A stretch of 64,000 nt of DNA from the NCBI GenBank assembly GCA_038087875.1, contig JAXLNO010001166.1:496001-560000 (forward strand). Direction: 5' to 3'. Shown here piece by piece: positions 10,570-57,429 of this stretch. How positions within the stretch are numbered: position 1 is the stretch's first letter; every line of letters starts with the position of its first letter. Source of the stretch: Malacoraja senta (lineage: Eukaryota). The notes under the pieces were generated by a model, which worked only from the letters and a program-made list of their open reading frames with translations, was not told the origin of the DNA and searched no databases. A program made the translations under genes and the position numbers.

Positions 10570-10864
10570 NNNNNNNNNNNNNNNNNNNNNNNNNNNNNNN
10601 NNNNNNNNNNNNNNNNNNNNNNNNNNNNNNNNNNNNNNNNNNNNNNNNNNNNNNNNNNNNNNNNNNNNNNNNNNNNNNNNNNNNNNNNNNNNNNNNNNNN
10701 NNNNNNNNNNNNNNNNNNNNNNNNNNNNNNNNNNNNNNNNNNNNNNNNNNNNNNNNNNNNNNNNNNNNNNNNNNNNNNNNNNNNNNNNNNNNNNNNNNNN
10801 NNNNNNNNNNNNNNNNNNNNNNNNNNNNNNNNNNNNNNNNNNNNNNNNNNNNNNNNNNNNNNNN
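10570..10864. other. Assembly gap (N run)
   Basis: 295 N characters. Confidence 1.
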
Positions 10865-11149
10865 TGGCTCATGTGGAGTGCATTTGGTGGAATTTGAACA
10901 AGTGGCATATTTTCTACAGCTGACGATTTCTCCCCTCTTGATTTCAATGCAAGTAATAACAAAACATGGAGAGATATTACATTGGGTTTATGATCTTAGA
11001 CGAGATGTGAAAATCGTGCTTTGCATTTCCATTAACGTTAATTTGAGGGTTTGTTTGTATCAATGCTACATTATCTGCCAGCATTAGGATTGTATTAGAG
11101 GGTATTCGCTGTAAGTCTTGTTTGTACAGAATTGGATTGTTTTCTCTGG

Positions 11150-14110: not shown

Positions 14111-14541
14111 TGAATAAGAACAGCGTTTACCATGTGGTCACTTGTAGCTGACACGTTTTCAATTGTCATGTCTGAATTTTATTCTAGTTTTCTGCACTAA
14201 CCTAATTTTCCTTAATAAATACCGATCGCCAATATGTGTATATCCGTTTTGCCTGCATATCATCGTTCCAGTGCTGGAGCGATTTGATGAGAAAAACATC
14301 GCAACATCTTATAAAACATTCTCATAGAGGTAATCACATTTCTTCTTCGTGCATACTTGAAACGTATTTTACAATGAAACTTCAAAGCTATCAAAGACAC
14401 AAGCTGGAGTAACTCAGCGAGTTAGGCAACATCTAACCCGCGGAATAACACCAGCTTTTTGTGTCTATCTTCGGTTTAAGCAACTGCAGTTCCTTCCTGC
14501 TCTTCAAATCTATCATTCCAGGATTTCAATCTTTCTGATCG

Positions 14542-14741
14542 NNNNNNNNNNNNNNNNNNNNNNNNNNNNNNNNNNNNNNNNNNNNNNNNNNNNNNNNNNN
14601 NNNNNNNNNNNNNNNNNNNNNNNNNNNNNNNNNNNNNNNNNNNNNNNNNNNNNNNNNNNNNNNNNNNNNNNNNNNNNNNNNNNNNNNNNNNNNNNNNNNN
14701 NNNNNNNNNNNNNNNNNNNNNNNNNNNNNNNNNNNNNNNNN
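14542..14741. other. Assembly gap (N run)
   Basis: 200 N characters; probably hides the left end of the DNA transposon. Confidence 1.
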
Positions 14742-17700
14742 AACTTTATCATTTCTACCTTTTTTTCTAAAGCTGCAAATAATAACTTGTTTCTGTTAAT
14801 GATGTTCAGTGTTTTTTTTTAAATTTACATTGTAAATAGATGTCTCCAAAGAAGAAATGCAAAATTGTCAATCCAAAAGCCCAGGCAGGCATAGCTAGAG
14901 TTCAACTTGAAGAGAAGTTCTCTGTCATGCCTGAGTCTAAGAGGGATCTTAAAAATGGACACATCTTGTGCTTGTATACCTCGTTTGGAAAAAGTCTGCC
15001 TGAAACAGAGAAATCGCTGAGTTCACATTTCTCTTTGTCGGATGCAGAAGGCTATTCATTTGTTACTGTTAAGTTAAAAGTGAAGACTCTCGTTAACCGG
15101 ACTTTGCTTAAGTTTAAAAAACTCACCAATCCCAAGGAACTTGGAGTATTTATGGAAATTTGTGATGAAACTTTTAAACTTCCGGAAGGCAGTCAACACA
15201 TTTCTTTAGATGACATTCCACTGCCTGGTGCTCAAGATCCTGAATCCTTGACATCTGCCGAAAGCCAAGTGCCCATATTTCAAGACACTGAGGACATGGG
15301 CGATGACAGTCATAGTCTGCATCCTCCACTGAATCTAGCAATGCCAACGACACCTGCTGCCTCACCTGAACCAATGCCATCGACATCTAGTGTTTCAAAA
15401 AGATGTACCAGAGAATTTCTAAGTCTTTCACCAGGGAAACAAAAATTGACGAAAAGACTAAAGTATATGTACGAATCCAGGGCTGCTCTTTCAACAAAGT
15501 ATCACACAAAGATCAGTGAACTTAGGGCACGGTTGAAAACTCCCAAACGTATAGTTAATCAAGCCTTAAAGAGAAAGCAAAACCAAATAGATTTAAAGGA
15601 CAGAAAGATTCAGGAACTCAAAACCAAATTACGTGATAATACTTCTGCACGAGTGCTTGCTAACACCAAGGCAGAGTTTTTGAAACTTAAAAAAGCACAC
15701 AGACAATTGCTGATGTTTCGTGGCAGTACGAAAAGGAGGAAAACTGTTTCAATTCACCAGTACAGAAAAGTTCATGAAAATTTAAAGGACAGGGAAGAGG
15801 ATGTGAGACGCCTCGAATTTGACAATCTTGTCCTCAAAGAAACAATCGAAAATCTGCAGGCTGCCAGTATTGTCAAGGCAAAGGTGGGCCAGAAAACCTA
15901 CTCCTCAACAATAAGGATGCATGTGTTTGACAGTATTGTAAACAAAACTCCCACAGCAAACATTCCAATCCTGATAAGCCAGTTCTACAAGCGGAGTGGA
16001 CTTCATCTGGATTATGTTCCTCGACGCAGTGCAGTTGAAGTTATGGCCCGAGAATTGGGAGCTATTGCTGAGTTGCAAACAGCAGAGATGCTCCTTGCAA
16101 CAAGCGGTTTGACTGTTGGGTTTGATGCAACCACCCAGGAAGAGACCCACATTAACAGTGTTCATTTCACCACCACAAACAACTGTCTCTCTGCAGCAGT
16201 TGATGAATTGGCTGGTGGGACTGCTGAGGACTATGCACAACATATTTGCGAAACAATTGACAATTTGTGTAAAACTTACATTTATTTTAATGAGCAAACA
16301 AATTTTCAAGATACAAGACAAAAGATAATCGACAACATTTCAAACACAATGAGTGACAGGTGTGCAGCTAATCATGCTGCTATTAGAATTGTGAGTAGTG
16401 AGTGGGGTAAATATTTGAACGAGCTCTACTGCCACTTGCATCCTCTTGACTCCATTGCTACATCAGTTCGCTCAGCCCTAAAAATGCAGAAACAATCCGG
16501 AGGACAATTCTTATTTGGGAAAGACTGTCTAGCAGTAAATGCCATACTGCAGATGAGCAAACTTAGATACAAAAACGGAAAAGGGGACCCAAAAGGATTT
16601 GTCGCATTTTTAGATGACAGGAACATCCCCCGAGGTGTCCTCCCACGGTACCGTGGCAACAGATTGCACATACTGTTTCATATTAGTGGCAAGCTGATAG
16701 AATATTATGATGACTTTGTTGCACTGCTGAATAGCGGAACATCCTGTGGGGGGTTGAAAAGCGCCATCCTCCATGACTTCACCCAGGCTGAAGCAAAAGT
16801 AGAACTTCAGATATTGGGCTTACTTGGCAAATATCTGACTGGGCCTTGGATGAAACGCTTCTACACTTCAAGCCAGAATCAGATCAACCATGTTGATGGC
16901 ATCAAAGTGGTTAAAGGGGTGATTGCTGCTCTAAAGGAAGCCACAGAAAATCCAGAGAACATCATATTGGCAAGGGAAGATTTCTTCGGTGAGGAGGTAC
17001 ATCTTGACGCCACATTGAAAAAACTTTGGGAGCTACCAATACATCCACAGTTCAGTTCAAAGATGAGGAGCTGTCTTCAAGCTGTCATCACTGTGTTGGA
17101 GAGGCAATATAGTAAATACTTTGAACTTGATGTTACTGAGAAACTGAAGGAGGAGACTGCATCAGCAAGATCACACAACATTGATGCGGAGGAGATAATG
17201 GGGATGTTTAGCTCATCGAAACAGAAATCTCCCAATGCCACCATGTGTTATTTGTCATGTAGGATGCGGGCCTGCAAGAATAGAACAGTCAATTACCTTG
17301 ATAATCTCGAGGAGCATCGTAGGGAGGAGGTGCTCTGTAAGGCAATGAAATTGGGGAGAGTGCAGAGGAACAGACGGAAGAAAAAACAGAAGGAATTGAG
17401 AGCAGAAATCATCAAGCGACAGAAAGGCAAGGAGCATGCTCGGGACACGAAAGAGAGGAAAAAAATAGAAAAAAAATTGAAAGAGACTGATTTAAACAGC
17501 ATTCGCAGAGATTATCCAAATTTGGACTACTCCAAATGTGATGATCTACAGGACATACTTAATGGGAAAGTAGTGGGCAGAAAGGCATGTCATGTGTGGT
17601 TTGAAGAGCAAAAACCTGTAGTTTACAATGCCAAAATTGAAAAGTTGAGGAAAAACAAGGTGTACAGAGTTGCTTATTGGTTGCAATCTGACGAGTATGA

Positions 17701-18289
17701 TGATGCTACTGATTTTGATATGCCAATGTACCAGCTAGCAGCTGATCTTCTCCTTAAAGATTTGGTCTTTTGCTAGAAATTGTAAATTAATTACCTATCT
17801 GTTACGGACTTACAGCATATAATACAATAATATTAAAGTTCTGATCTTGAGAATATCACATTTTTGAATTTTCAAAGCAGTCTGGGTGTTTATTACTATT
17901 TCCGTCACATCGGTCAATTTTGTAATTAGCTACAATTAAGTAACTAACTAATTATATGCTGCAATTTCAGGTCATCCAAGTAAGATTATTTTATATTTGT
18001 TTCAGAATGCTTCAATCTATAATAACTGAAAATTTCATTCAGTTCTCTTAATTTTTAAGAAAGTTATGGGCTTTTGACTGTCCTCGATCACAGCTTTTGA
18101 GACAAGTCAATGGAAAGGCAATAGGGAACAAGATGCTAATTTCCGAGTATGAAAATGGCCATAACTTTTTTAATACTGAAGATATCAAAGTGAATTAGGT
18201 GTCAAATTAAACTTCTTGTAATGCTTTATCTGATGGGATAAATTACAGACTTGATTTTTAAAATCTCAAAATTTTGTAACATTGCTACT
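14742..18289 (+). mobile_element. DNA transposon containing the 978-aa ORF; right terminus ...GTAACATTGCTACT
   Basis: About 510 bp AT-rich 3' arm with internal inverted motifs (aaagttatgg ~18060 / ccataacttt ~18159), ending in ACATTGCTACT at 18279-18289. An AG...CT terminus fits Kolobok-type RR...YY ends. The left end is not visible next to the ORF. Confidence 0.6.
14840..17776 (+). CDS. Intact 978-aa DDE transposase-like protein (Kolobok-like or another CxxH-insertion family)
   Basis: Uninterrupted 2937-bp ORF. Basic coiled-coil N-terminal half. Candidate catalytic residues D429 (VGFDATT), D506 (MSDRCAAN), C531xxH534 (CHLH) and E784/785 (SHNIDAEEIMG). Lys/Arg-rich tail and a Tudor-like-looking C-terminus (VVGRKACHVW..YNAKI..VYRVAYW). 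Superfamily assignment is inference. Confidence 0.75.
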   Translation: MSPKKKCKIVNPKAQAGIARVQLEEKFSVMPESKRDLKNGHILCLYTSFGKSLPETEKSLSSHFSLSDAEGYSFVTVKLKVKTLVNRTLLKFKKLTNPKELGVFMEICDETFKLPEGSQHISLDDIPLPGAQDPESLTSAESQVPIFQDTEDMGDDSHSLHPPLNLAMPTTPAASPEPMPSTSSVSKRCTREFLSLSPGKQKLTKRLKYMYESRAALSTKYHTKISELRARLKTPKRIVNQALKRKQNQIDLKDRKIQELKTKLRDNTSARVLANTKAEFLKLKKAHRQLLMFRGSTKRRKTVSIHQYRKVHENLKDREEDVRRLEFDNLVLKETIENLQAASIVKAKVGQKTYSSTIRMHVFDSIVNKTPTANIPILISQFYKRSGLHLDYVPRRSAVEVMARELGAIAELQTAEMLLATSGLTVGFDATTQEETHINSVHFTTTNNCLSAAVDELAGGTAEDYAQHICETIDNLCKTYIYFNEQTNFQDTRQKIIDNISNTMSDRCAANHAAIRIVSSEWGKYLNELYCHLHPLDSIATSVRSALKMQKQSGGQFLFGKDCLAVNAILQMSKLRYKNGKGDPKGFVAFLDDRNIPRGVLPRYRGNRLHILFHISGKLIEYYDDFVALLNSGTSCGGLKSAILHDFTQAEAKVELQILGLLGKYLTGPWMKRFYTSSQNQINHVDGIKVVKGVIAALKEATENPENIILAREDFFGEEVHLDATLKKLWELPIHPQFSSKMRSCLQAVITVLERQYSKYFELDVTEKLKEETASARSHNIDAEEIMGMFSSSKQKSPNATMCYLSCRMRACKNRTVNYLDNLEEHRREEVLCKAMKLGRVQRNRRKKKQKELRAEIIKRQKGKEHARDTKERKKIEKKLKETDLNSIRRDYPNLDYSKCDDLQDILNGKVVGRKACHVWFEEQKPVVYNAKIEKLRKNKVYRVAYWLQSDEYDDATDFDMPMYQLAADLLLKDLVFC

Positions 18290-18290
18290 T

Positions 18291-18598
18291 GTATCCATTT
18301 CTGCAGCCACTTCAAAAACTTCAGAGGTAACTTGACCTTCAGACTTCTTCTGGTTTCTCAGCAGCTTTTTCACTGATCTCTGAGGGCTCTTGGCTGGAGA
18401 CAGTTTACTCATTTAAAAGGCTTTAAACCACCGTTTAAAACATCGCGCTTACTGATGACGTCATCAGCCCGGCGACCAGCAGCTCCGGTAAGGTTTTTAA
18501 ATCCAGTCCTGATTTATGGACCCGTTTTACACGATAAATCGTGAAATTTTTCGGGAGCGGAGCTAGGTGCACGTCTGTTAGTCCAACATGGCGCCTCA
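18291..18598 (-). mobile_element. Probable L1 5' UTR and ORF1 start fragment
   Basis: Reverse complement begins 'ggcgccatgttggactaacagacgtgcacctagctcc' (CpG-rich, L1-like head). An ATG at 18412 opens MSKLSPAKSPQRSVKKLLRNQKKSEG..., cut at the transposon end. Confidence 0.45.
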
Positions 18599-19783
18599 GT
18601 TTCTAGATTTATGAATGGAATTTTTAATTCCAATCCTCCCAGGCCCAGGTATTCGGTAATCTGGAATGTAAGCGAAGTTCTTATGCTCCGTTGTCAGTAG
18701 ACTCCTGTCACAGCCCTGTCTTTGGCCAAGGTCACCATGAAGGTAGTCGTGCTTATGGCGTTGGTTTCAGCCCAAAGTGTGCAGACATTACAGAAGCTGC
18801 GACTAGACAGGATGGAAGTGTCAGCTGATGCCGTCAGTTTTTACATCTATGATTTGCTCAAGCAGAGTAGACTAGGGGCGACAGGGTGTAAGATTACTTT
18901 TTCGGCATACCCCACGGATTCCCGCCTGTGTGTGGTGTCATGTTTGTTATATTACATCGAGGCTACCAGAACCCTAAGAGGTGCAGAATCAGCATTGTTT
19001 ATTAGCCACAAAAAAATGCATAGAAAGTTGTCAGTTCAGACTATTTCAAGGTGGCTAAAGCAGGTTCTGGTTTATGCTGGGATTGACACTGACAATTTTA
19101 AATCTCATTCCACCAGGGCGGCATCAACTTCAGCGGCCAGGGTAATGGACGTCCCTAGAGACCATATTCTCGCGGCCACAGGATGGTCCAATGAATTGAT
19201 GTTCCAAAAGTTTTATCATAAACCAATTGCCAAACCGGGGGTATTTGCCCATTAAGTTTTGAGTTCAGTTTTATAGTTTCCCCCTGGGATAGAAGGGATT
19301 GCTATTGTTTCTTTACAAAATAAACCGTTAATGCGTTTAAAGCAATGTTATGGTTTGATGCATTATTGATTATTTACTCATTCTGAGTCAATCGATGCAG
19401 TGAGACGCCTGGATTTGAATCTGCGGCATGAAATCACAGAGCTTTGAAATCTTCACGTAGTCACTCACGTGACTCCGAAGTAAAATAGTAAGATTAAACG
19501 AGAACTTACCAGTTTGAAGTTTGATCTTTATTTTATGAGGAATTACGATGAGGGATTACGTGCCCTCCGCTCCCAACCCTCATAAAGGTCATCTGGTAGT
19601 TCTAGTCTTCTCTAATCTTACTATTATACTTCAATTACTATTACCTGTGATTTCACACTGCTGCTTTGAAGATTGACGCGCATGCGGATGGACGGGGTCT
19701 TCTTCACGTAATCCCTCATCGTAACTCCTCATAAAATAAAGATCAAACTTCAAACTGGTAAGTTCTCGTTTAATCTTACTATT
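18598..19783 (+). mobile_element. DIRS1-like tyrosine-recombinase retrotransposon, 3' fragment (YR pseudogene + ICR/right ITR)
   Basis: SRFMNGIFNSNPPRPRYSVIWNV then an in-frame TAG. YR motifs FKSHSTRAAS (HxxR) and GWSNELMFQKFY. The first catalytic Arg position reads SAQSVQ. A 79-bp inverted repeat lies at 19484-19562 / 19705-19783. Confidence 0.88.
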
Positions 19784-19789
19784 ACTCCT

Positions 19790-19999
19790 TAGGATGGTGA
19801 CATCCAATTTCCAACAGTTCTCTATTTTAAGAACTTCTTCCTCCCATTCCCTCTTGGAATATTTAGTGTTATTATTCAGCAGAGATTCATGAACAAATAG
19901 AAGCAATCATGTCTACAGTATCAATCCCAATGGTGAGTTATACTCCTCCATTGGGCCCTGCATTCCCCTTTCATCTGCGCTGTCAGTTAAAGTCTGGAG
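19790..19999 (-). pseudogene. Possible decayed MHC class I alpha2-like exon
   Basis: Acceptor 'ctccttatcatag' at 20000-20001. Across frameshifts it reads LQTLT..QMKGEC..PNGGV..IGIDTVDMI..FVHESL..TKYSKREWEEE..WK, loosely paralleling alpha2 motifs. Highly degenerate. Confidence 0.3.
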
Positions 20000-20349
20000 C
20001 TATGATAAGGAGCGTTAGTGATATTAAAACGAAATGTTTTGTTGTTTTGCCAGAAATGCAAAATGAAGAGAGAAAAGGCTGTAAACTTTGTGCAAGATAA
20101 AACTGCAGATGCTGGTTTACACCGAAGATGTTGGCGTAACTCAGTGGGTCAGATAGCATCTCTGGGCATTCCTTCTCTCCAGAGGTGCTGCCTGACCTGC
20201 TGAGTTATTCCAGCATTTTGGGTCTAGGCTGGAAAATTAGTTCAGCCAGAGAAAAAACTCTGATTGGGAAAGTGGTGAGTTGCAGTGATCTTACAATTGA
20301 AGGCTTTTGTTCATGTCTTCACTGATTCTGACGCTTCTTACACTTGCAG

Positions 20350-20622
20350 AAACCTCTGAGGTGTTTATTGGGATTAAACGTGATGGGTCACAATCACTGA
20401 GACTCTCCTGCCTTGTCACAGGCTTCTAGCCACGGGCCATCGATGTAACGTGGCTGAGAGATGGTGAGGGGGTCCACGAGTCTGAATCCAGTGATCTGTT
20501 GCCCAATTGGGATGGGACTTACCAGCTGAAGAATACAATTCAACTGAATAGAGAAGATGTGGCAAAATTCTCCTGTTACATCGAACATGCAACTCTGCTG
20601 CAGGGAGTCAATGTTCCACAGG
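20350..20622 (+). pseudogene. MHC class I alpha3 (Ig C1-set) exon with a premature stop
   Basis: Acceptor cttgcag at 20349, donor gtaagt at 20623, 273 nt, phase 1/1. Reads TSEVFIGIKRDGSQSLRLSCLVTGF*PRAIDVTWLRDGEGVHESESSDLLPNWDGTYQLKNTIQLNREDVAKFSCYIEHATLLQGVNVPQ. Both Cys, W and LLPNxDGTYQ are present. TAG at 20427-20429 replaces the Y of GFYP. Absent from the ORF track. Confidence 0.88.
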
Positions 20623-20719
20623 GTAAGTGGCAAGTCAATGAGGCTGATCACTTGAGACCATAAACCTCCTGGACTGAGATAACAGCCTCAACACACTCTT
20701 AACTCAACTCTGGATTTAG

Positions 20720-51909: not shown

Positions 51910-52960
51910 GCCTAGGTCCTTGGATGGAGTCAAGGGGGGAGGTAAAGCGACAAGTGTAGCATTTCCTGCAGTTGCAAGTGAAAGTACCAGGGGAGGGGGT
52001 GGTTTGGGTGGAAAGGGACGAATTGACCAGGGAGTTACAGAGGGAGCAGTCTCTGCAGAAAGCCGAAAGGGGAGAAGATGAGAAGATGTGGTCAGTGATG
52101 GTATCCCGTTGGAGGTGGCGAATATGTCGGAGGATTATCTGTTGTATGTGACGGCTGGTAGGGTGGAATGTGAGGACAAGGGGGACTTGTCATGAGTGGG
52201 GGGGGGGGATGGGGAGTGAGAGCGGAGCAACGGGATATAGAAGAGACCCTGGTGAGAGCCTCATCTATAGTCGAAGAGAAGAAGCCTCGTTCCCTAACCT
52301 TCCCCTCCCCTGGCACTTTCCCTTGCAACTGCAGGAAATGCTACACTTGTCGCTTTATCTCCCCCCTTGACTCCATCCAAAGATCTAAGCAGTCTTTCCA
52401 GGTGAGGCAGAGGTTCACCTGCCCCTCCTCCAACCTCATCTATTGCATCCGCTGCTCTAGGTGTCAACTGCTCTACATCGGTGAGACCAAGCTGAGGCTT
52501 GGCGATCGCTTCGCCCAACACCTCCGCTCAGTCCGCATTAACCAAGCTGATCTCCCGGTGGCTCAGCACTTCAACTCCCCCTCCCATTCAGAATCAGACC
52601 TTTCGGTCCTGGGTCTCCTCCACGGCCAGAGTGAGACCCTCCGCAAATTGGAGGAGCAGCATATCATTTGTTGCTTGGGTAGTTTACACCCCAGCGGTAT
52701 GAACATTGACCTCCATTTTCAGGTAGTCCTTGCTTTCTCCCTCCTTCCCCTCCCCTTCGAAGCTCTCCCACAGCCTACTATCTCCACCTCTTCCTTTCTT
52801 CTTCCCGCCCCCCCATCCCCATATCAGTCTGAAGAAGGGTCTCGACCCAAAAATCACCTATTCCTTTGCTCCATAGATGCTGCCTCACCGCTGAGTATCT
52901 CCAGCATTTTTGTCTACCTTCGATTTTTCCAGCATCTGCAGTTCTTTCTTAAACATGTAC
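51910..52960. mobile_element. Penelope-like element with an inverted 5' segment (- ~51910-52290, + ~52295-52960)
   Basis: ~51912-52000 is the reverse complement of ~52300-52390. The plus part encodes CRKCYTC...NLIYCIRCSRCQLLYIGETK (GIY-YIG) and ends in a pLTR. Confidence 0.88.
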
Positions 52961-53098
52961 TTGTTCCTTGTACTTTCCCCAAGTGTATGATGGGGGTAAT
53001 ATGGAGTGAGCTTTATCCAAAATCAAATGTGAGGTAAGAGTCGTTTAATTGTCATATGTATCAACAATAGAACAACATTCTGACTTGCTGCAGCTTAA

Positions 53099-53415: not shown

Positions 53416-54224
53416 TGAATTTTCTTTTTAAAAGGCAGTACATTGAGGCAACTGGCAGAATTGGTGCCCCTCTGCTACAGCAACTTGGATTCAATCCTGA
53501 TCTCGGGTACAACGTGTATCATTTTCATGTTCTCCATATGACACGTGGATCTCCACCAAATGCTCCGTTCCTCCTATATCTCAAAGACATGCGAGTTGGT
53601 TGGTTATAATTGAATTCTGTAAATTGCCCAGTGTGTGATTGGATGACAGATGTTGTCTATGTTTAGTTTAGTTTAGAGATACAGTGAGGAAACAGACCCT
53701 ACAGCCCACCGGGCCTGCACCGACCAGCGATCCCCGCATTTTAACGCTACCCTACACACACTAGGGGTAATTTTACCTTTTATACCAAGCCAATTAACGT
53801 ACAAACCTGTACGTCTTTGGAGTGTGGGAGGAAACCGAAGATCTTGGAGAAAACCTACGCAGGTCACGGGGAGAACGTACAAACTCCATGTAGAAAAGCA
53901 CTTGTAGATGGGACTGAACCCATGTCTCTGGCACTGTAAAGCAGTAGCCTTACGACTATGCCACCATGCCATCCTTCAGCAAGGCCCCACATGGGTGGCT
54001 GGTCCATTAGGTTGGAAAACATGGGATCCAGGGTGAGCTAGTCAATTGGACACAAAGTTGGCTTGGTGGTAGGAGTCAGAGAATGGTAATGCAGGGTTGT
54101 TGTTTTTTTACATAGGAAGCCTGTGACCAGTGGTATGCCTCAGGGACTGATGCTCTGATGTCATTCAGTCACACACAGTGCTCTCAGACTGATTAATGAT
54201 TTCAATTTGCAGAAATGAAAGAGA

Positions 54225-54345
54225 TGAAGGAAAGAGAGATAGAGCTGAGGGATGAGAGATGGAGAGATAAATAGACGGAGAGAGATAGGGAGATAGAGAG
54301 AGAGATATATAGTGAGATGGAGAGAGATGATAGATAGAGAGAGGG
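54225..54345. repeat. Imperfect (GA)n purine-rich simple repeat
   Basis: gagagatagagctgagggatgagagatggagagataaatagacggagagagatagg... Confidence 0.85.
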
Positions 54346-54509
54346 ATAATGTGATTGATACTTGTTGAGAGCAGAGCTGAAAATAGGTGAGGTGCCCTTG
54401 GGAAACAGTGTGGACACAGGATGTCTGAGGATGGCCAGTTTATAAATGGACTACACTATGAAGGAAAATAGATCAATGTTAAGAGTTCTCAAGCCAGATA
54501 AGCAAAACT

Positions 54510-55975
54510 AAGGTACACAAAAATGCTGGAGAAACTCAGCGGGTGCAGCAGCATCTATGGAGCGAAGGAAATAGGCAACGTTTCGGGCCGAAACCCTTCT
54601 TCAGACTGATAGGGGGTGGGGAGAAGAAAGGAAAAAAGGCAGAGGAGGAGCCCGAGGGCTGGGGGAGGGGAGGAGACAACCATAGGGCTGATGAAGGGGA
54701 GGGGACAGCAAGGGCTAGCAGAATTGGGAGAATTCAATGTTCAAGCCCCCAGGATGTAGACTGCCCAAGCGGAATATGAGGTGCATTTCCTCCAATTTCC
54801 GGTGTTGCTCGCTGTGGCCATGGAGGAGACCCAGGACAGAGAGGTCAGATACGGAATGGGAGGGGGAGTTGAAGTGCTGAGCCACCGGGGAGGTCAGGAT
54901 GGTTATTGCAGACCGACCGGAGGTGTTCGGCGAAACGATCGCCAAGCCTCCGCTTGGTCTCACCGATGTAGATCAGCTGGCATCTAGAGCAGCGGATGCA
55001 ATAGATGAGGTTGGAGGAGATGCAGGTGAACCTCTGTCGCACCTGGAACGACTGCTTAGGTCCTTGAATGGAGTCGAGGGGGGAGGTGAAGGGACAAGTG
55101 TTGCATCTCTTGCGGTTGCAAGGGAAAGTACCCGGGGAGGGGGTGGTACGGGAGGGAAGGGAAGAATTGACAAGGGAGTTACGGAGGGAGCGGTCTTTGC
55201 GGAAGGCAGACATGGAGGGAGATGGGAAGATGTGGCGAGTGGTGGGATCACGTTGGAGGTGGCGAAACTGACGGAGGATCACTTGTTGTATGTGACGGCT
55301 GGTGGGGTGAAAGGTGAGGACTAGGGGGACTCTGCCCTTGTTGTGAGTGGGGGGATGCGGAGAGAGAGCAGTGTTGTGGGGTATGGCAGCGACCCTGGTG
55401 CGAGCCTCATCTATGGTGGAGGAGGGGAACCCCCGTTCCCTGAAGAATGAGGACATTTCGGATGCCCTGGTGTGGAACGCCTCATCCTGGGAGCAGATGC
55501 GGTGTAGACGGAGGAATTGGGAGTTGGGGATGGAGTCCTTACAGGAAGCAGGGTGGGAAGAAGTGTAGTCCAGATAGCCATGGGAGTCGGTAGGTTTGTA
55601 GTGGATGTCGGTAAGGAGTCTATCACCTGCGATGGAGATAGTGAGGTCAAGGAATGGTAGGGAAGTGTCGGAAATGGTCCAGGTGTATTTGAGTGCCGGA
55701 TGGAAGTTGGTGGTGAAGCGGATGAAATCAGTCAGTTGTGTTTGGGTGCAGGAGGTGGCACCAAAGCAATCATCGATGTAGCGGAGGTAGAGGTCGGGGA
55801 TGGGACCCTGGTACGCATTGAACAAGGATTGTTCTACGTATCCGACAAAGAGGCAGGCGTAGCTGGGGCCAATGCGTTTGCCCATAGCTACGCCTTGTAT
55901 TTGGAGGAAATGGGAGGAGTCAAATGAGAAGTTATTGAGGGTAAGGACCAGCTCCGCTAGGCGGAGGAGGGTGTC
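54510..55975 (-). mobile_element. Penelope-like element, best-preserved copy (RT C-half, GIY-YIG endonuclease, pLTR)
   Basis: 346-aa ORF with QGVAMG (just upstream of the listed start), YLRYIDDCFG, DYTSSHP and IYCIRCSRCQLIYIGETKRRLGDRFAEH. Frameshift near 54880; 5'-truncated. Confidence 0.93.
54574..54609 (-). ncRNA. Minimal type I hammerhead ribozyme motif in a Penelope pLTR
   Basis: Minus strand TCAGT-CTGAAGA-A-GGGT(TTCG)GCCC-GAAAC-GTT-GCC: CUGANGA and GAAA cores, stem II with a UUCG loop, palindromic ACGU stem III and a GUU cleavage triplet. Activity untested. Confidence 0.7.
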
Positions 55976-57429
55976 AGTGGCCGGGTATAGGTTGCAGTCC
56001 CTGGATGAGTGGCAACTTGAATTTCTTGATTTTCTTTTCAGAGTTCAGACCTTGGATTAGAGTCTATTGTGCAACAAATCAGCTGAGCCCCTGGACAGAT
56101 TAATGGTTGCCTGTTCAACATTCTGTACAACTGTAACATGACACCCCAACCCTAGTCCTCAGTACCATGGCTGAGGAAACATGGCATAACATATACTCTG
56201 TGACGGAATGAACAGCAGATGCTAATTTAAACCGAAGATAGACACAAAAAGCTAGAGAGACTCAGCGGCAATATTTCTGGAGAGAAGGAATGGGTGACCT
56301 TTTGGGTTGAGACGATTCTTTAGACATATATTCCCTTCACTACCCTATCAAACTATGATGCCATTTTCAGGGAACTATGTAATTGTACACCAAGGTACAG
56401 CTCCATTTACAATCCTGCAATAACCCGGTGGGGGGGAGGGGGCAGGGGGTGTGGCACTCGGCAGCTTGAGAGCCCATCGTGATTGGTGCACTGGAGGGGG
56501 GGTGGGGAGGGGGGAGGGAGGGTTGGAGCACTGGAGTGCCCATCCCTCCTGGAGTGGCCCTGTCCTGCCTTGCGAGTGCATTGTGAAGTCACTCGGATTT
56601 TGTTTCCAAAATGGAAGAGTTTGAAGAAATCAGACTGTTAAATTTTTTTTTACGATTAATAACTTCGGAAATATAGGTGGAAATGTGACGGGAAGATGTT
56701 TATTGCCACCATGGGGAAAAATGTGAGTAAGATGTGTGAAAATGAGAAAGCTGTGGCCTAGCATCAGGAAGAAGATAGGAATTAACCAGATTGACACACA
56801 CAGAGACACATCGTGGGCACAAACAAGCCAAAGACTTTTAGTTATATAGAGATGTCCTAGATAGAACAATGACATTCTTACTTGCAGCAGCACAACAGAA
56901 TATGTAAACATAGTACACTGTAAACAATATAAGAAACAAGAAATAAAAATATCTGGGTGTGTATATATACACACATACTCACAAATACACATATATACAG
57001 ATCATATTCGTATATATATATACACACACACATACTCATATGTACACACAAAAAACAAACAATAATGGTGCAACAATAACAATAATAGTCTATTTAGTTA
57101 AGAGCTTGTTTAAGGCTGTAGTGTTTAATAGCCTAAAGGATGTAGGGTAGAAGTTATTCCTGAACCTGACGTTACAGTTTTAAGGCTCCTGTACCTTCTA
57201 CCCTATGGCAGGGGTGAAATAAGTGTGTGGCCAGGGTGGTGTGTGACTCTGATGATGCTTGCTGCCTTTTTGAGCTTCCTTCGATGGTAGGAAGGTCAGA
57301 ACCCGTGATGGACTGGGCAGTGTTCACAAGTTTTTACAGTCTTCTTCACTCCTACATTAAATGAATGAGGGTAACTTGATAAAGAATAAATCCACTCAGA
57401 AAATAAAAGCTGTCATCTCTGTGAGGAGC

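What the first reader, a model, noticed from the sequence alone, without database searches (positions are those of the whole stretch)
14840..17776. Fully open 978-codon DDE transposase-like ORF among decayed elements
Every other long TE coding region in the window has stops, frameshifts or truncation, while this one is uninterrupted. It shows D429, D506, C531xxH534 and E784/785, the D-D-CxxH-E layout shared by hAT, P, MULE and Kolobok transposases. It also has a long coiled coil and a Tudor-like-looking C-terminal domain, which is unusual and could be a chromatin reader for targeting. It resembles elements I associate with aquatic invertebrates more than familiar vertebrate families. The options are a recently active or horizontally transferred family, or a domesticated gene.
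Basis: partly seen in the sequence, partly recalled or inferred. Interest (0 to 1): 0.75.

Follow-up and report, generated by a model that had tools for sequence, protein, structure and literature searches.

The report
Intact hAT-like transposase with Tudor tail
This is an unbroken copy of the gene for a cut-and-paste "jumping gene" enzyme: its core is shaped like hAT transposases, its tail like the histone-mark reader Spindlin, and it belongs to a large, unnamed animal-wide transposon family rather than being a host gene.

Summary
There is one 978-codon ORF at 14840-17776 (+) with D429, D506, C531xxH534 and E784/E785. It is far longer than any other ORF in the window.

- A long coiled coil comes before the core.
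- The last 89 residues form a Tudor-type barrel closest to Spindlin.

The protein has no Pfam or PDB sequence match. It belongs to a very large unnamed metazoan family (2764 clusters).

It is a transposon, not a domesticated gene:
- Reads from this and related species show it is multi-copy, with many internal-deletion derivatives.
- The repeat ends exactly at 18287, on a terminal sequence like that of a 59%-identical relative.
- That relative has near-identical copies with 17-bp terminal inverted repeats and 7-bp target duplications.
- Copies in two other species carry frameshifts, and the sampled differences look neutral.

Canonical hAT, P and Kolobok membership tests are not fully met.

The 5' end of this copy lies at an N stretch and is unseen, so autonomy and activity are unproven. 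Horizontal transfer is not shown. Earlier notes of this scan describe the same family elsewhere in this genome.

The parts
14542..14741 (.). Stretch of N 98 bp upstream of the ATG. It hides the 5' part of the element, or marks its loss.
   Evidence: The expected 5' inverted repeat (reverse complement of 18272-18287) is not found on the + strand anywhere in the window.
14742..14839 (+). Visible remnant of the element's 5' untranslated region, directly upstream of the conserved start codon.
   Evidence: Bin 14742-14940 has word depth ~4900 in run X1, against ~172-199 for the unique flank at 20314-20700. A contig of another species runs through 14791-15122 without a splice (table 8).
14840..17776 (+). 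Transposase ORF, 978 aa, uninterrupted, including the stop codon.
   Evidence: 120 homologues, best 74% identical in the core. It keeps all 38 invariant alignment columns.
14840..15184 (+). N-terminal basic stretch (MSPKKK...) and a small five-helix domain (aa ~18-108) with the conserved NGH(V/I)L motif and C108. It has no BED or THAP cysteine/histidine pattern. It is presumed to bind DNA ends (inference).
   Evidence: pLDDT ~90; alignment A4; conserved Cys/His list.
15431..15865 (+). Long coiled-coil region, aa 198-342, preceded by a disordered linker (aa 118-196).
   Evidence: Helices H198-233, H235-265, H268-295 and H305-342. The profile hits only coiled-coil proteins in the PDB, e.g. BICDR1 at E 0.0026.
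15893..17317 (+). Catalytic core, aa 352-826: an RNase H-like fold with an all-alpha insertion domain (aa ~564-772). D429 is at 16124-16126, D506 at 16355-16357, C531xxH534 at 16430-16441 and E784 at 17189-17191.
17507..17773 (+). C-terminal Tudor-type barrel of the Spin/Ssty (Spindlin) kind, aa 890-978. Conserved residues are H918, W920, Y946, W947 and D969.
   Evidence: Domain model with pLDDT 93.9. Best PDB matches are Spindlin1 (prob 1.0, TM 0.54-0.57), then SMN, SPF30, PHF20 and SGF29 Tudor domains. Members give sub-threshold Pfam Tudor hits. The distant relative P0120 carries Pfam Spin-Ssty above cut-off at the same position.
17777..18287 (+). 3' untranslated part of the element, ending at its 3' terminus.
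   Evidence: Depth stays very high to ~18323 and then falls. Joints and loose ends sit at 18287-18289.
18272..18287 (+). 3' terminal sequence TTTTGTAACATTGCTA, the presumed right terminal inverted repeat.
   Evidence: 12 of 16 bases match the 3' terminus (CATTGTAACATACCTA) of the 59%-identical relative, whose ends were defined from multiple copies. It coincides with the read-derived repeat boundary at 18287.
14881..17480 (+). Interval removed in internally deleted, non-autonomous derivatives. Breakpoints are 14881-14884 joined to 17480, with 2-5 filler bases.
   Evidence: Joints seen in contigs of organisms A, B and I (tables 5 and 5c). Depth rises about 100-fold from 17480 onward.

Best explanation
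The ORF is the transposase gene of a cut-and-paste DNA transposon. The transposon belongs to a large, so far unnamed, metazoan-wide lineage whose enzyme core is built like hAT transposases.

Shown:
- The ORF is intact and keeps every family-invariant residue.
- The fold is RNase H-like with a Hermes-type all-alpha insertion domain.
- The family is repeated in this and related species, with internal-deletion derivatives.
- The element ends at 18287 on a conserved terminal sequence.
- A 59%-identical relative has copies 99.5-99.95% identical to each other, with 17-bp terminal inverted repeats (TAGGTATGTTA...) and 7-bp target-site duplications.

Inferred mechanism:
- The N-terminal helical domain binds the element ends.
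- The coiled coil assembles the multimer.
- D429, D506 and E784 hold two metal ions that cut and rejoin DNA.
- CxxH and the insertion domain (invariant W670) help handle the cut flank, as in hAT.
- Integration makes a 7-bp staggered cut.
- The Spindlin-like Tudor barrel tethers the enzyme to a methylated histone tail or another host protein and so biases where it lands.

This copy may still encode an active enzyme. Its 5' end is unseen, so whether the element itself is autonomous is not known.
For: - ORF and residues. Conservation of D429, C531, H534, E784 (invariant) and D506 (>=90%).
- Model with pLDDT 81.7 and correct placement of the catalytic residues on the secondary structure.
- Atlas neighbours by shape, and by features on the core alone, are hAT families.
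- Family size of 2764 clusters at E<=1e-3.
- Multi-copy state, deletion joints 14881-4>17480, repeat boundary at 18287 and frameshifting indels in copies of organisms I and E.
- Terminal inverted repeats and three clean 7-bp target duplications in the relative's copies L005, L009 and L011.
- The window's 3' end resembles that terminus.
- Tudor domain.
- No excess of synonymous differences (7 synonymous, 19 non-synonymous).
Against: - No sequence-level link to hAT: no Pfam hit and no PDB sequence hit even with a core profile.
- The target duplication in relatives is 7 bp, not the 8 bp of hAT.
- There is no BED finger.
- The 5' terminus and the target duplication of this very copy are not visible (N stretch), so it could be a 5'-truncated, immobile copy.
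- Transcription is not shown. The 'RNA?' runs may hold DNA, and their contigs are of frameshifted copies.
- No transposition or histone-binding activity has been tested.
- One pair of relative copies (L007/L008) shares 4942 bp at 99.98% without recognisable inverted repeats or target duplication at the shared boundaries.
Confidence: 0.85

Rival explanations
1. It is a domesticated host gene derived from such a transposase, kept open by selection for a cellular function such as a chromatin-bound factor.
For: The ORF is fully open and retains all invariant residues. The ORF body is low-copy: near-identical contigs have depth ~300 against ~172 for the unique flank. A pyrimidine-rich tract ending in AG sits directly before the ATG and could be a splice acceptor. 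Related sequence at about 97% identity, judged from word shares of ~0.4, is present in at least seven other organisms.
Against: Thousands of contigs at 90-99% identity and internal-deletion derivatives show a mobile family. The sequence ends on a transposon-type terminus at 18287. Copies in organisms I and E carry frameshifting indels. The sampled differences are 27% synonymous against 21% expected by chance. A contig crosses the putative acceptor unspliced. An earlier scan note reports a second 978-aa copy with a 7-bp target duplication about 20 kb beyond the window (not checked here).
Confidence: 0.05
2. It is a divergent member of the P or the Kolobok superfamily rather than a hAT-like lineage.
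For: A 7-bp target duplication is what P-superfamily elements such as Galileo and 1360 make (my knowledge; PMC4168063 was listed but not read). P element transposase is the second-best Foldseek match (6pe2, E 1.3e-5). Feature search with the whole protein lists P-like clusters as the nearest named ones, at scores of only 0.69-0.74. P transposase also has a coiled coil after its DNA-binding domain (my knowledge). The CxxH motif is shared by hAT, P, Kolobok and MuDR (PMC3706591).
Confidence: 0.08
3. The family entered this lineage recently by horizontal transfer from an aquatic invertebrate.
For: The family tree does not follow the species tree. The skate groups with an unnamed sequence and a sea urchin (Lytechinus), a fish (Misgurnus) groups with a sponge, and Priapulus groups with a limpet. 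Most relatives are from aquatic invertebrates.
Against: The best database hit is only 74% identical in the core and 66% overall, and branches are long (0.13-0.4 changes per site). The family is present at about 97% identity in at least seven other organisms that hold the sequence, which fits inheritance within the group. Old paralogous lineages with differential loss explain the patchiness equally well.
Confidence: 0.1

Closest known systems
hAT superfamily transposases (Hermes, PDB 6dwz/4d1q/2bw3; Ac, hobo, Tol2)
   Different: No detectable sequence similarity. No BED zinc finger. No Pfam hAT dimerisation-domain match. 7-bp rather than 8-bp target duplication in relatives. A 140-residue coiled coil precedes the core and a Tudor-type barrel is added at the C-terminus. 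Length is ~980 aa against ~600-700.
P element transposase / THAP9 (PDB 6pe2, 6p5a)
   Same: DDE with C/DxxH. An insertion domain sits at the same place in the RNase H fold. Second-best Foldseek match. P-superfamily elements make 7-8-bp target duplications, and P transposase has a coiled coil after its N-terminal DNA-binding domain (my knowledge).
   Different: No THAP domain and no GTP-binding insertion domain by Pfam. Structural score is far below Hermes.
Kolobok superfamily
   Same: D-D-CxxH-E layout. Frequent in Hydra, molluscs, echinoderms and fishes (PMC9587614).
   Different: Kolobok makes TTAA duplications, and almost all members have a zinc finger between CxxH and E (PMC9587614). Neither is seen here.
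Spindlin (Spin/Ssty) Tudor-like repeats, e.g. Spindlin1 bound to H3K4me3 (PDB 4mzg, 7bqz)
   Same: The C-terminal 89 residues fold into the same barrel (prob 1.0, TM 0.54-0.57, rmsd 2-3 A). The sister clade reaches the Pfam Spin-Ssty cut-off. Conserved aromatic residues W920, Y946 and W947 could form a methyl-lysine cage (inference).
   Different: There is a single repeat fused to an enzyme, not three tandem repeats. Foldseek E-values are weak (0.02). The ligand is unknown.
Chromodomain-bearing integrases of chromoviruses (Ty3/gypsy) and LEDGF-tethered lentiviral integrases
   Same: As an analogy only: an RNase H-fold integrase coupled to a chromatin reader that steers integration (my knowledge).
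   Different: Those are retroelement integrases with a different reader fold or a host adaptor.

Membership tests
hAT superfamily | RNase H-like DDE catalytic domain interrupted by a large all-alpha insertion domain, Hermes-like | tested here: met
hAT superfamily | CxxH motif after the second aspartate | tested here: met
   C531 and H534 are invariant in 44 homologues and lie just after strand 527-530.
hAT superfamily | Sequence match to the hAT family models (Pfam Dimer_Tnp_hAT, DUF659, DUF4371, hAT-like RNase-H) or to Hermes | tested here: not met
   No Pfam hit at E<=1 except a chance DUF1563. No PDB sequence hit with a single sequence or with profiles. No hAT Pfam domain on any of 120+120 listed relatives.
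hAT superfamily | 8-bp target-site duplication | tested here: not met
   In the 59%-identical relative, three copies show clean 7-bp duplications (GTTCTTT, TACACTT, CATGATA). This could not be tested on the window copy because the 5' end is unseen.
hAT superfamily | N-terminal BED zinc finger | tested here: not met
   The N-terminal domain is helical, and only H41 and C108 are conserved among Cys/His. No Pfam zf-BED hit.
hAT superfamily | Short terminal inverted repeats with the 5'-YARNG consensus (consensus from my knowledge) | tested here: inconclusive
   The relative has TAGGT... with 16 of 17 bases complementary between the ends. The window's 3' end implies TAGCA.... The first three bases fit and the fifth does not.
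P superfamily | THAP DNA-binding domain and GTP-binding insertion domain (Pfam TNP-like families) | tested here: not met
   No such Pfam hits. 6pe2 is second by Foldseek but is not among the 50 best VIA-align entries.
P superfamily | 7-8-bp target-site duplication | tested here: met
   7 bp in three copies of a relative.
Kolobok superfamily | TTAA target-site duplication | tested here: not met
   Flanks of L005, L009 and L011 are GTTCTTT, TACACTT and CATGATA.
Kolobok superfamily | [quoted passage not shown] | tested here: not met
   Only scattered conserved C563, H610, H614, H684, C745 and H779, with no compact motif. A metal site formed in 3D cannot be excluded.
Spin/Ssty (Spindlin-type) Tudor-like domain | Tudor-type beta barrel closest to the Spindlin repeats | tested here: met
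   Domain model with pLDDT 93.9. Spindlin1 and Spindlin4 head the list (prob 0.98-1.0), followed by SMN, PHF20 and SGF29 Tudor domains.
Spin/Ssty (Spindlin-type) Tudor-like domain | Pfam PF02513 above the gathering score | tested here: inconclusive
   The window's domain does not reach it. Among 44 members, 2 hit Spin-Ssty and 3 hit PTM/DIR17 Tudor, all below threshold. The distant relative P0120 reaches 33 bits against a cut-off of 25 at the same C-terminal position, and many of its clade carry PF02513.
Spin/Ssty (Spindlin-type) Tudor-like domain | Binding of methylated histone tails through an aromatic cage | not testable with these tools
   Conserved H918, W920, Y946, W947 and D969 are compatible with it, but no residue-level superposition or binding data are available.
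Domesticated transposase gene | Single orthologous locus without transposon ends, under purifying selection | tested here: not met
   Multi-copy with deletion derivatives, a transposon-type terminus at 18287, and frameshifted copies in other species. 7 synonymous against 19 non-synonymous sampled differences (a small, selected sample).

The most novel reading that the evidence does not exclude
The family is a separate superfamily-level lineage of cut-and-paste transposons, sister to hAT, with 7-bp target duplications. Its two deep clades, about 22% identical, both keep a Spindlin-type Tudor reader. This skate copy, together with a second intact copy reported nearby, would still be active in a vertebrate. 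A further possibility is that the vertebrate Spindlin repeats and this transposase tail share ancestry.
Probability: 0.25. Interest if true: 0.8.

Novelty: new variant of a known kind. Interest (0 to 1): 0.5.

Why it matters
Naturally intact cut-and-paste transposases are rare in vertebrates, and the few known ones (Tol2, Tgf2, some Buster and piggyBat elements) became genetic tools.

A transposase that carries its own histone-mark-reader-like domain would be a natural example of chromatin-guided integration in a DNA transposon. So far that idea is known mainly from retroelements such as chromoviruses and LEDGF-tethered integrases. This copy would give a ready test object: an intact natural ORF with abundant non-autonomous partners.

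The family is also very large (2764 clusters at 50% identity), spans sponges to fishes, and is annotated only as 'uncharacterized protein' with no Pfam model. Naming it would clean up many genome annotations.

Tried and rejected
- Pfam on the whole protein, and PDB sequence searches with the single sequence and two profiles, gave nothing but coiled-coil noise.
- Dada was considered and rejected. Dada has DxxH, many introns, CCCC and CCHC fingers, and targets small-RNA genes (PMC3706591).
- hATx of Hydra was checked and is a canonical BED + hATC element of 674 aa with an 8-bp duplication (PMC8721813), so it is not this family.
- The profile search of 1.84 billion representatives lists only the best 150 hits, all close family. 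It therefore gave the family size but no bridge to a named family.
- A second word-index search from the distant relative P0120 found a large sister clade but again no hAT, P or THAP Pfam domain.
- Searching the window for the expected 5' inverted repeat, or for the 3' flank heptamer followed by TAG, found nothing convincing.
- Inverted-repeat searches around the ORF in the window and in the Hydra locus L001 gave only chance matches or (TA)n tracts.
- DNA for the closest relatives P0001 and P0004 could not be fetched because the sample file is too large.
- The joints 18287/18289>20101 first looked like an insertion within the element. However, 20101-20220 is an unrelated high-copy hairpin repeat and 18722-19255 is a tyrosine-recombinase fragment. 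I therefore read 18287 as the true end.
- Literature searches for a transposase with a Spindlin/Tudor tail found no description.
- Repbase and Dfam are not available here, so 'already catalogued under some name' cannot be excluded.
Full report
**Observation.** One search lists one ORF of 978 codons at 14840-17776 on the + strand. No other ORF in the window exceeds 369 aa. The next longest are pieces of LINE endonuclease/reverse transcriptase and GIY-YIG (Penelope-like) genes. An N stretch at 14542-14741 sits 98 bp upstream of the ATG. I left it as it is.

**What the protein is.**
- It has no Pfam match and no sequence match in the PDB.
- It has 120 listed homologues of about the same length, all unnamed or 'uncharacterized'. 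They come from Hydra, molluscs, echinoderms, Priapulus, Lingula, a sea spider, a sponge and two teleosts. The best is 74% identical in the core.
- In an alignment of 44 full-length members, 38 columns are invariant, among them D429, C531, H534 and E784. D506 is conserved in at least 90%. The start (M-P-P-K-K-K) is conserved too, so the ORF is complete.
- A profile of the core finds 2764 clusters (50% identity level) at E<=1e-3 and 486 at E<=1e-30. This is a very large family.

**Fold.** The AlphaFold model built on that alignment has mean pLDDT 81.7. Its parts, in order:
- a small five-helix N-terminal domain (18-108)
- a disordered linker (118-196)
- about 140 residues of long helices (198-342)
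- a beta-beta-beta-alpha-beta-alpha-beta unit (424-530)
- an all-helical block (564-772)
- a helix starting at 781
- a very long helix (825-882)
- a beta barrel (915-977)

D429 lies on the first strand, D506 just after the fourth, CxxH just after the fifth, and E784 at the start of the helix after the helical block. This is the arrangement of DDE transposases with an insertion domain.

Beyond the family's own clusters, the ESM Atlas shape neighbours are all hAT families (DUF659, DUF4371/ZMYM1-like, ZBED1 RNase-like, Dimer_Tnp_hAT), with TM by the target of 0.41-0.81. A feature search with the core alone points the same way, after an unnamed Basidiomycota family. A core profile still finds nothing in PDB sequences. 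The link to hAT is therefore structural only.

**C-terminal domain.** The last 89 residues, modelled alone, give pLDDT 93.9. Their best matches are Spindlin1 and Spindlin4 (prob 0.98-1.0, TM 0.5-0.57, rmsd 2-3 A), followed by SMN, SPF30, PHF20 and SGF29 Tudor domains, although E-values are weak at 0.02 and above. Single members give sub-threshold Pfam hits to several Tudor families. A distant relative, P0120 (E 1.7e-10 and 22% identity to the core), reaches the Pfam Spin-Ssty cut-off at the same C-terminal position. Its large clade includes the sponges Dysidea and Sycon and often carries PF02513. H918, W920, Y946, W947 and D969 are conserved. That they form a methyl-lysine cage is my inference.

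**Transposon or host gene.** One call of read laying on 14742-20700 with four runs gave the following.
- Tens of thousands of contigs lie on the stretch in identity bands from 90% to over 99%.
- In run X1, the near-identical contigs of the ORF body have depth ~296-332 against ~172-199 for the unique flank at 20278-20700. Summed depth over the ORF body is about 1.7-8 times the flank.
- The 5' bin (14742-14940) is at ~4900, 17528-17925 at ~50,000-65,000, and 17926-18323 at ~590,000.
- Contigs of organisms A, B and I join 14881-14884 directly to 17480 with 2-5 filler bases. This is the signature of internally deleted, non-autonomous derivatives that keep the ends.
- Depth collapses after ~18323, and joints and loose ends with heterogeneous continuations sit at 18287-18289.
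- The copies assembled from organisms I and E are 4-9% diverged and carry frameshifting deletions (1, 2, 4, 11 and 13 bases).
- One contig crosses the AG-ATG boundary at 14839/14840 unspliced.

Of the 26 best-supported single-base differences inside the ORF, 7 are synonymous and 19 are not. That is 27% synonymous against 21% expected for random changes. This is a small, selected sample, but it shows no purifying selection.

The word shares (0.78 in organism A, ~0.40 in seven others) correspond to roughly 99% and 97% identity.

**Ends.** A relative 59% identical in the core (P0009) occurs as exactly the same protein on four contigs of one assembly, with further members in its cluster.
- The copies are 99.5-99.95% identical over ~4.49 kb.
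- They begin TAGGTATGTTAAAATGA and end TCATTGTAACATACCTA, with 16 of 17 bases complementary.
- Three copies have clean 7-bp target duplications: GTTCTTT, TACACTT and CATGATA. The others have a damaged end or non-matching flanks, and one of those also carries a LINE insertion.
- The window's element ends TTTTGTAACATTGCTA at 18272-18287. That is 12 of 16 identical to the relative's terminus, and it falls exactly at the read-derived boundary.
- The matching 5' repeat is nowhere on the + strand of the window. The 5' end is therefore hidden in, or lost at, the N stretch.
- What lies upstream of the gap is other repeats.

**Classification.** The fold, the CxxH motif and the style of the ends are hAT-like. 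The missing sequence similarity, missing BED finger, 7-bp duplication, coiled coil and Tudor tail are not.
- P shares the 7-8-bp duplication and a coiled coil, but the THAP and GTP-binding domains are absent and the structural score is much lower.
- Kolobok is disfavoured by the non-TTAA duplication and by the lack of the zinc finger that nearly all Kolobok carry between CxxH and E (PMC9587614).
- Dada and hATx were checked in the literature and do not fit.

I file it as a hAT-like lineage that fails several canonical hAT criteria. Whether Repbase or Dfam already holds it under some name cannot be tested here.

**Horizontal transfer.** A maximum-likelihood tree of 52 cores puts the skate sequence next to an unnamed ENA protein, in a supported clade (95/97) with a sea urchin, and next to a clade with the teleost Scleropages. 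Elsewhere a fish groups with a sponge and Priapulus with a limpet. The tree is patchy, but branches are long and nothing is near-identical. Recent transfer is therefore not shown.

**Earlier notes of this scan.** The same family was noted elsewhere in this genome, which those notes call a skate, as a hAT-like transposase with a Spindlin-type Tudor domain. The notes cover intact and dead, internally deleted copies. One note describes a second 978-aa copy with a 7-bp duplication about 20 kb beyond this window. These are unchecked AI notes. My fold, Tudor and deletion-derivative results were obtained independently and agree. The second copy would fit the ~1.7-1.9-fold depth of the ORF body.

**Mechanism.**
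- Shown: an intact ORF with all conserved residues; a Hermes-like catalytic architecture; a mobile family with inverted repeats, 7-bp duplications (in a relative) and deletion derivatives.
- Inferred: end binding by the N-terminal helical domain; multimerisation through the coiled coil; two-metal catalysis by D429, D506 and E784; hAT-like handling of the flank by CxxH and the insertion domain (invariant W670); and tethering to a methylated histone tail or host factor by the Tudor barrel.
- Not shown: transcription, activity, and autonomy of this particular copy.

Noticed in passing
window 17916-18287: This last ~370 bp of the element is about ten times more abundant in reads than 17480-17915: depth ~590,000 against a ~172 unique flank in X1, and ~1.8-2.0 million in X3. 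Many contigs share one different, conserved sequence just upstream of 17916. It looks like a very high-copy MITE-like derivative that shares only the 3' end.
   Followed up: partly
window 18722-19255 and 19484-19783: A 177-aa ORF ends in a tyrosine-recombinase-like tail (HSTRAA...GWSNELMFQKFYHKP). It is followed by a 79-nt, 99% complementary inverted repeat pair (19484-19562 / 19705-19783), which is itself very high-copy in reads. It is probably a DIRS/Ngaro- or Crypton-like fragment directly downstream of the transposon end.
   Followed up: no
window 20340-20625: An exon-like stretch between an AG acceptor and a GT donor encodes an Ig C1-set domain of the MHC class I alpha-3 type (...LSCLVTGF*PRAIDVTWLRDGE...DGTYQL...FSCYIEHATL...). 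It has an in-frame TAG where GFYP is expected.
   Followed up: no
window 20101-20220 and 14436-14498 (and about ten other places): A high-copy repeat of about 65-120 bp (CTGGAGTAACTCAGCGGGTCAGGCAGCATCT-like) recurs through the window. It produced misleading joints to 20101 in the read contigs. It may be the element another note calls rod-like with hammerheads.
   Followed up: no
L007:3757-8698 and L008:3757-8698: Two copies of a relative (P0017, 942 aa) share 4942 bp at 99.98% identity in different flanks. I could find neither inverted repeats nor a target duplication at the shared boundaries. The 3' side ends in a T-rich run.
   Followed up: partly
L004:1412-5539: One copy of the P0009-type element is interrupted by a ~4.1-kb non-LTR retrotransposon (ORF with Exo_endo_phos and RVT_1), and its two flanks do not form a target duplication.
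   Followed up: no
P0120 clade: A second deep clade with the same architecture (~1000 aa; Pfam Spin-Ssty at the C-terminus) has 261 hits, including the sponges Dysidea avara and Sycon ciliatum. One hit is labelled as a Pelagibacterales MAG protein, which is probably eukaryotic contamination.
   Followed up: partly
L001:5883-5994 and 10696-10987: The Hydra vulgaris homologue (P0070) is flanked on both sides by long (TA)n tracts, and its annotated gene spans 3693 bp for 943 aa, so the model has introns.
   Followed up: no
window 52192-53037 (+) and 54845-55885 (-): Two ORFs of 281 and 346 aa give weak GIY-YIG hits and are probably Penelope-like element remnants. The G-rich skew at 54001-56000 (GC skew 0.41) coincides with one of them.
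   Followed up: no
window 11049-11068: Just after the first N stretch (10570-10864), the sequence GTTTGTTTGTATCAATGCTA resembles the 3' terminus of the element (13 of 16). About one such match in the window is expected by chance.
   Followed up: no
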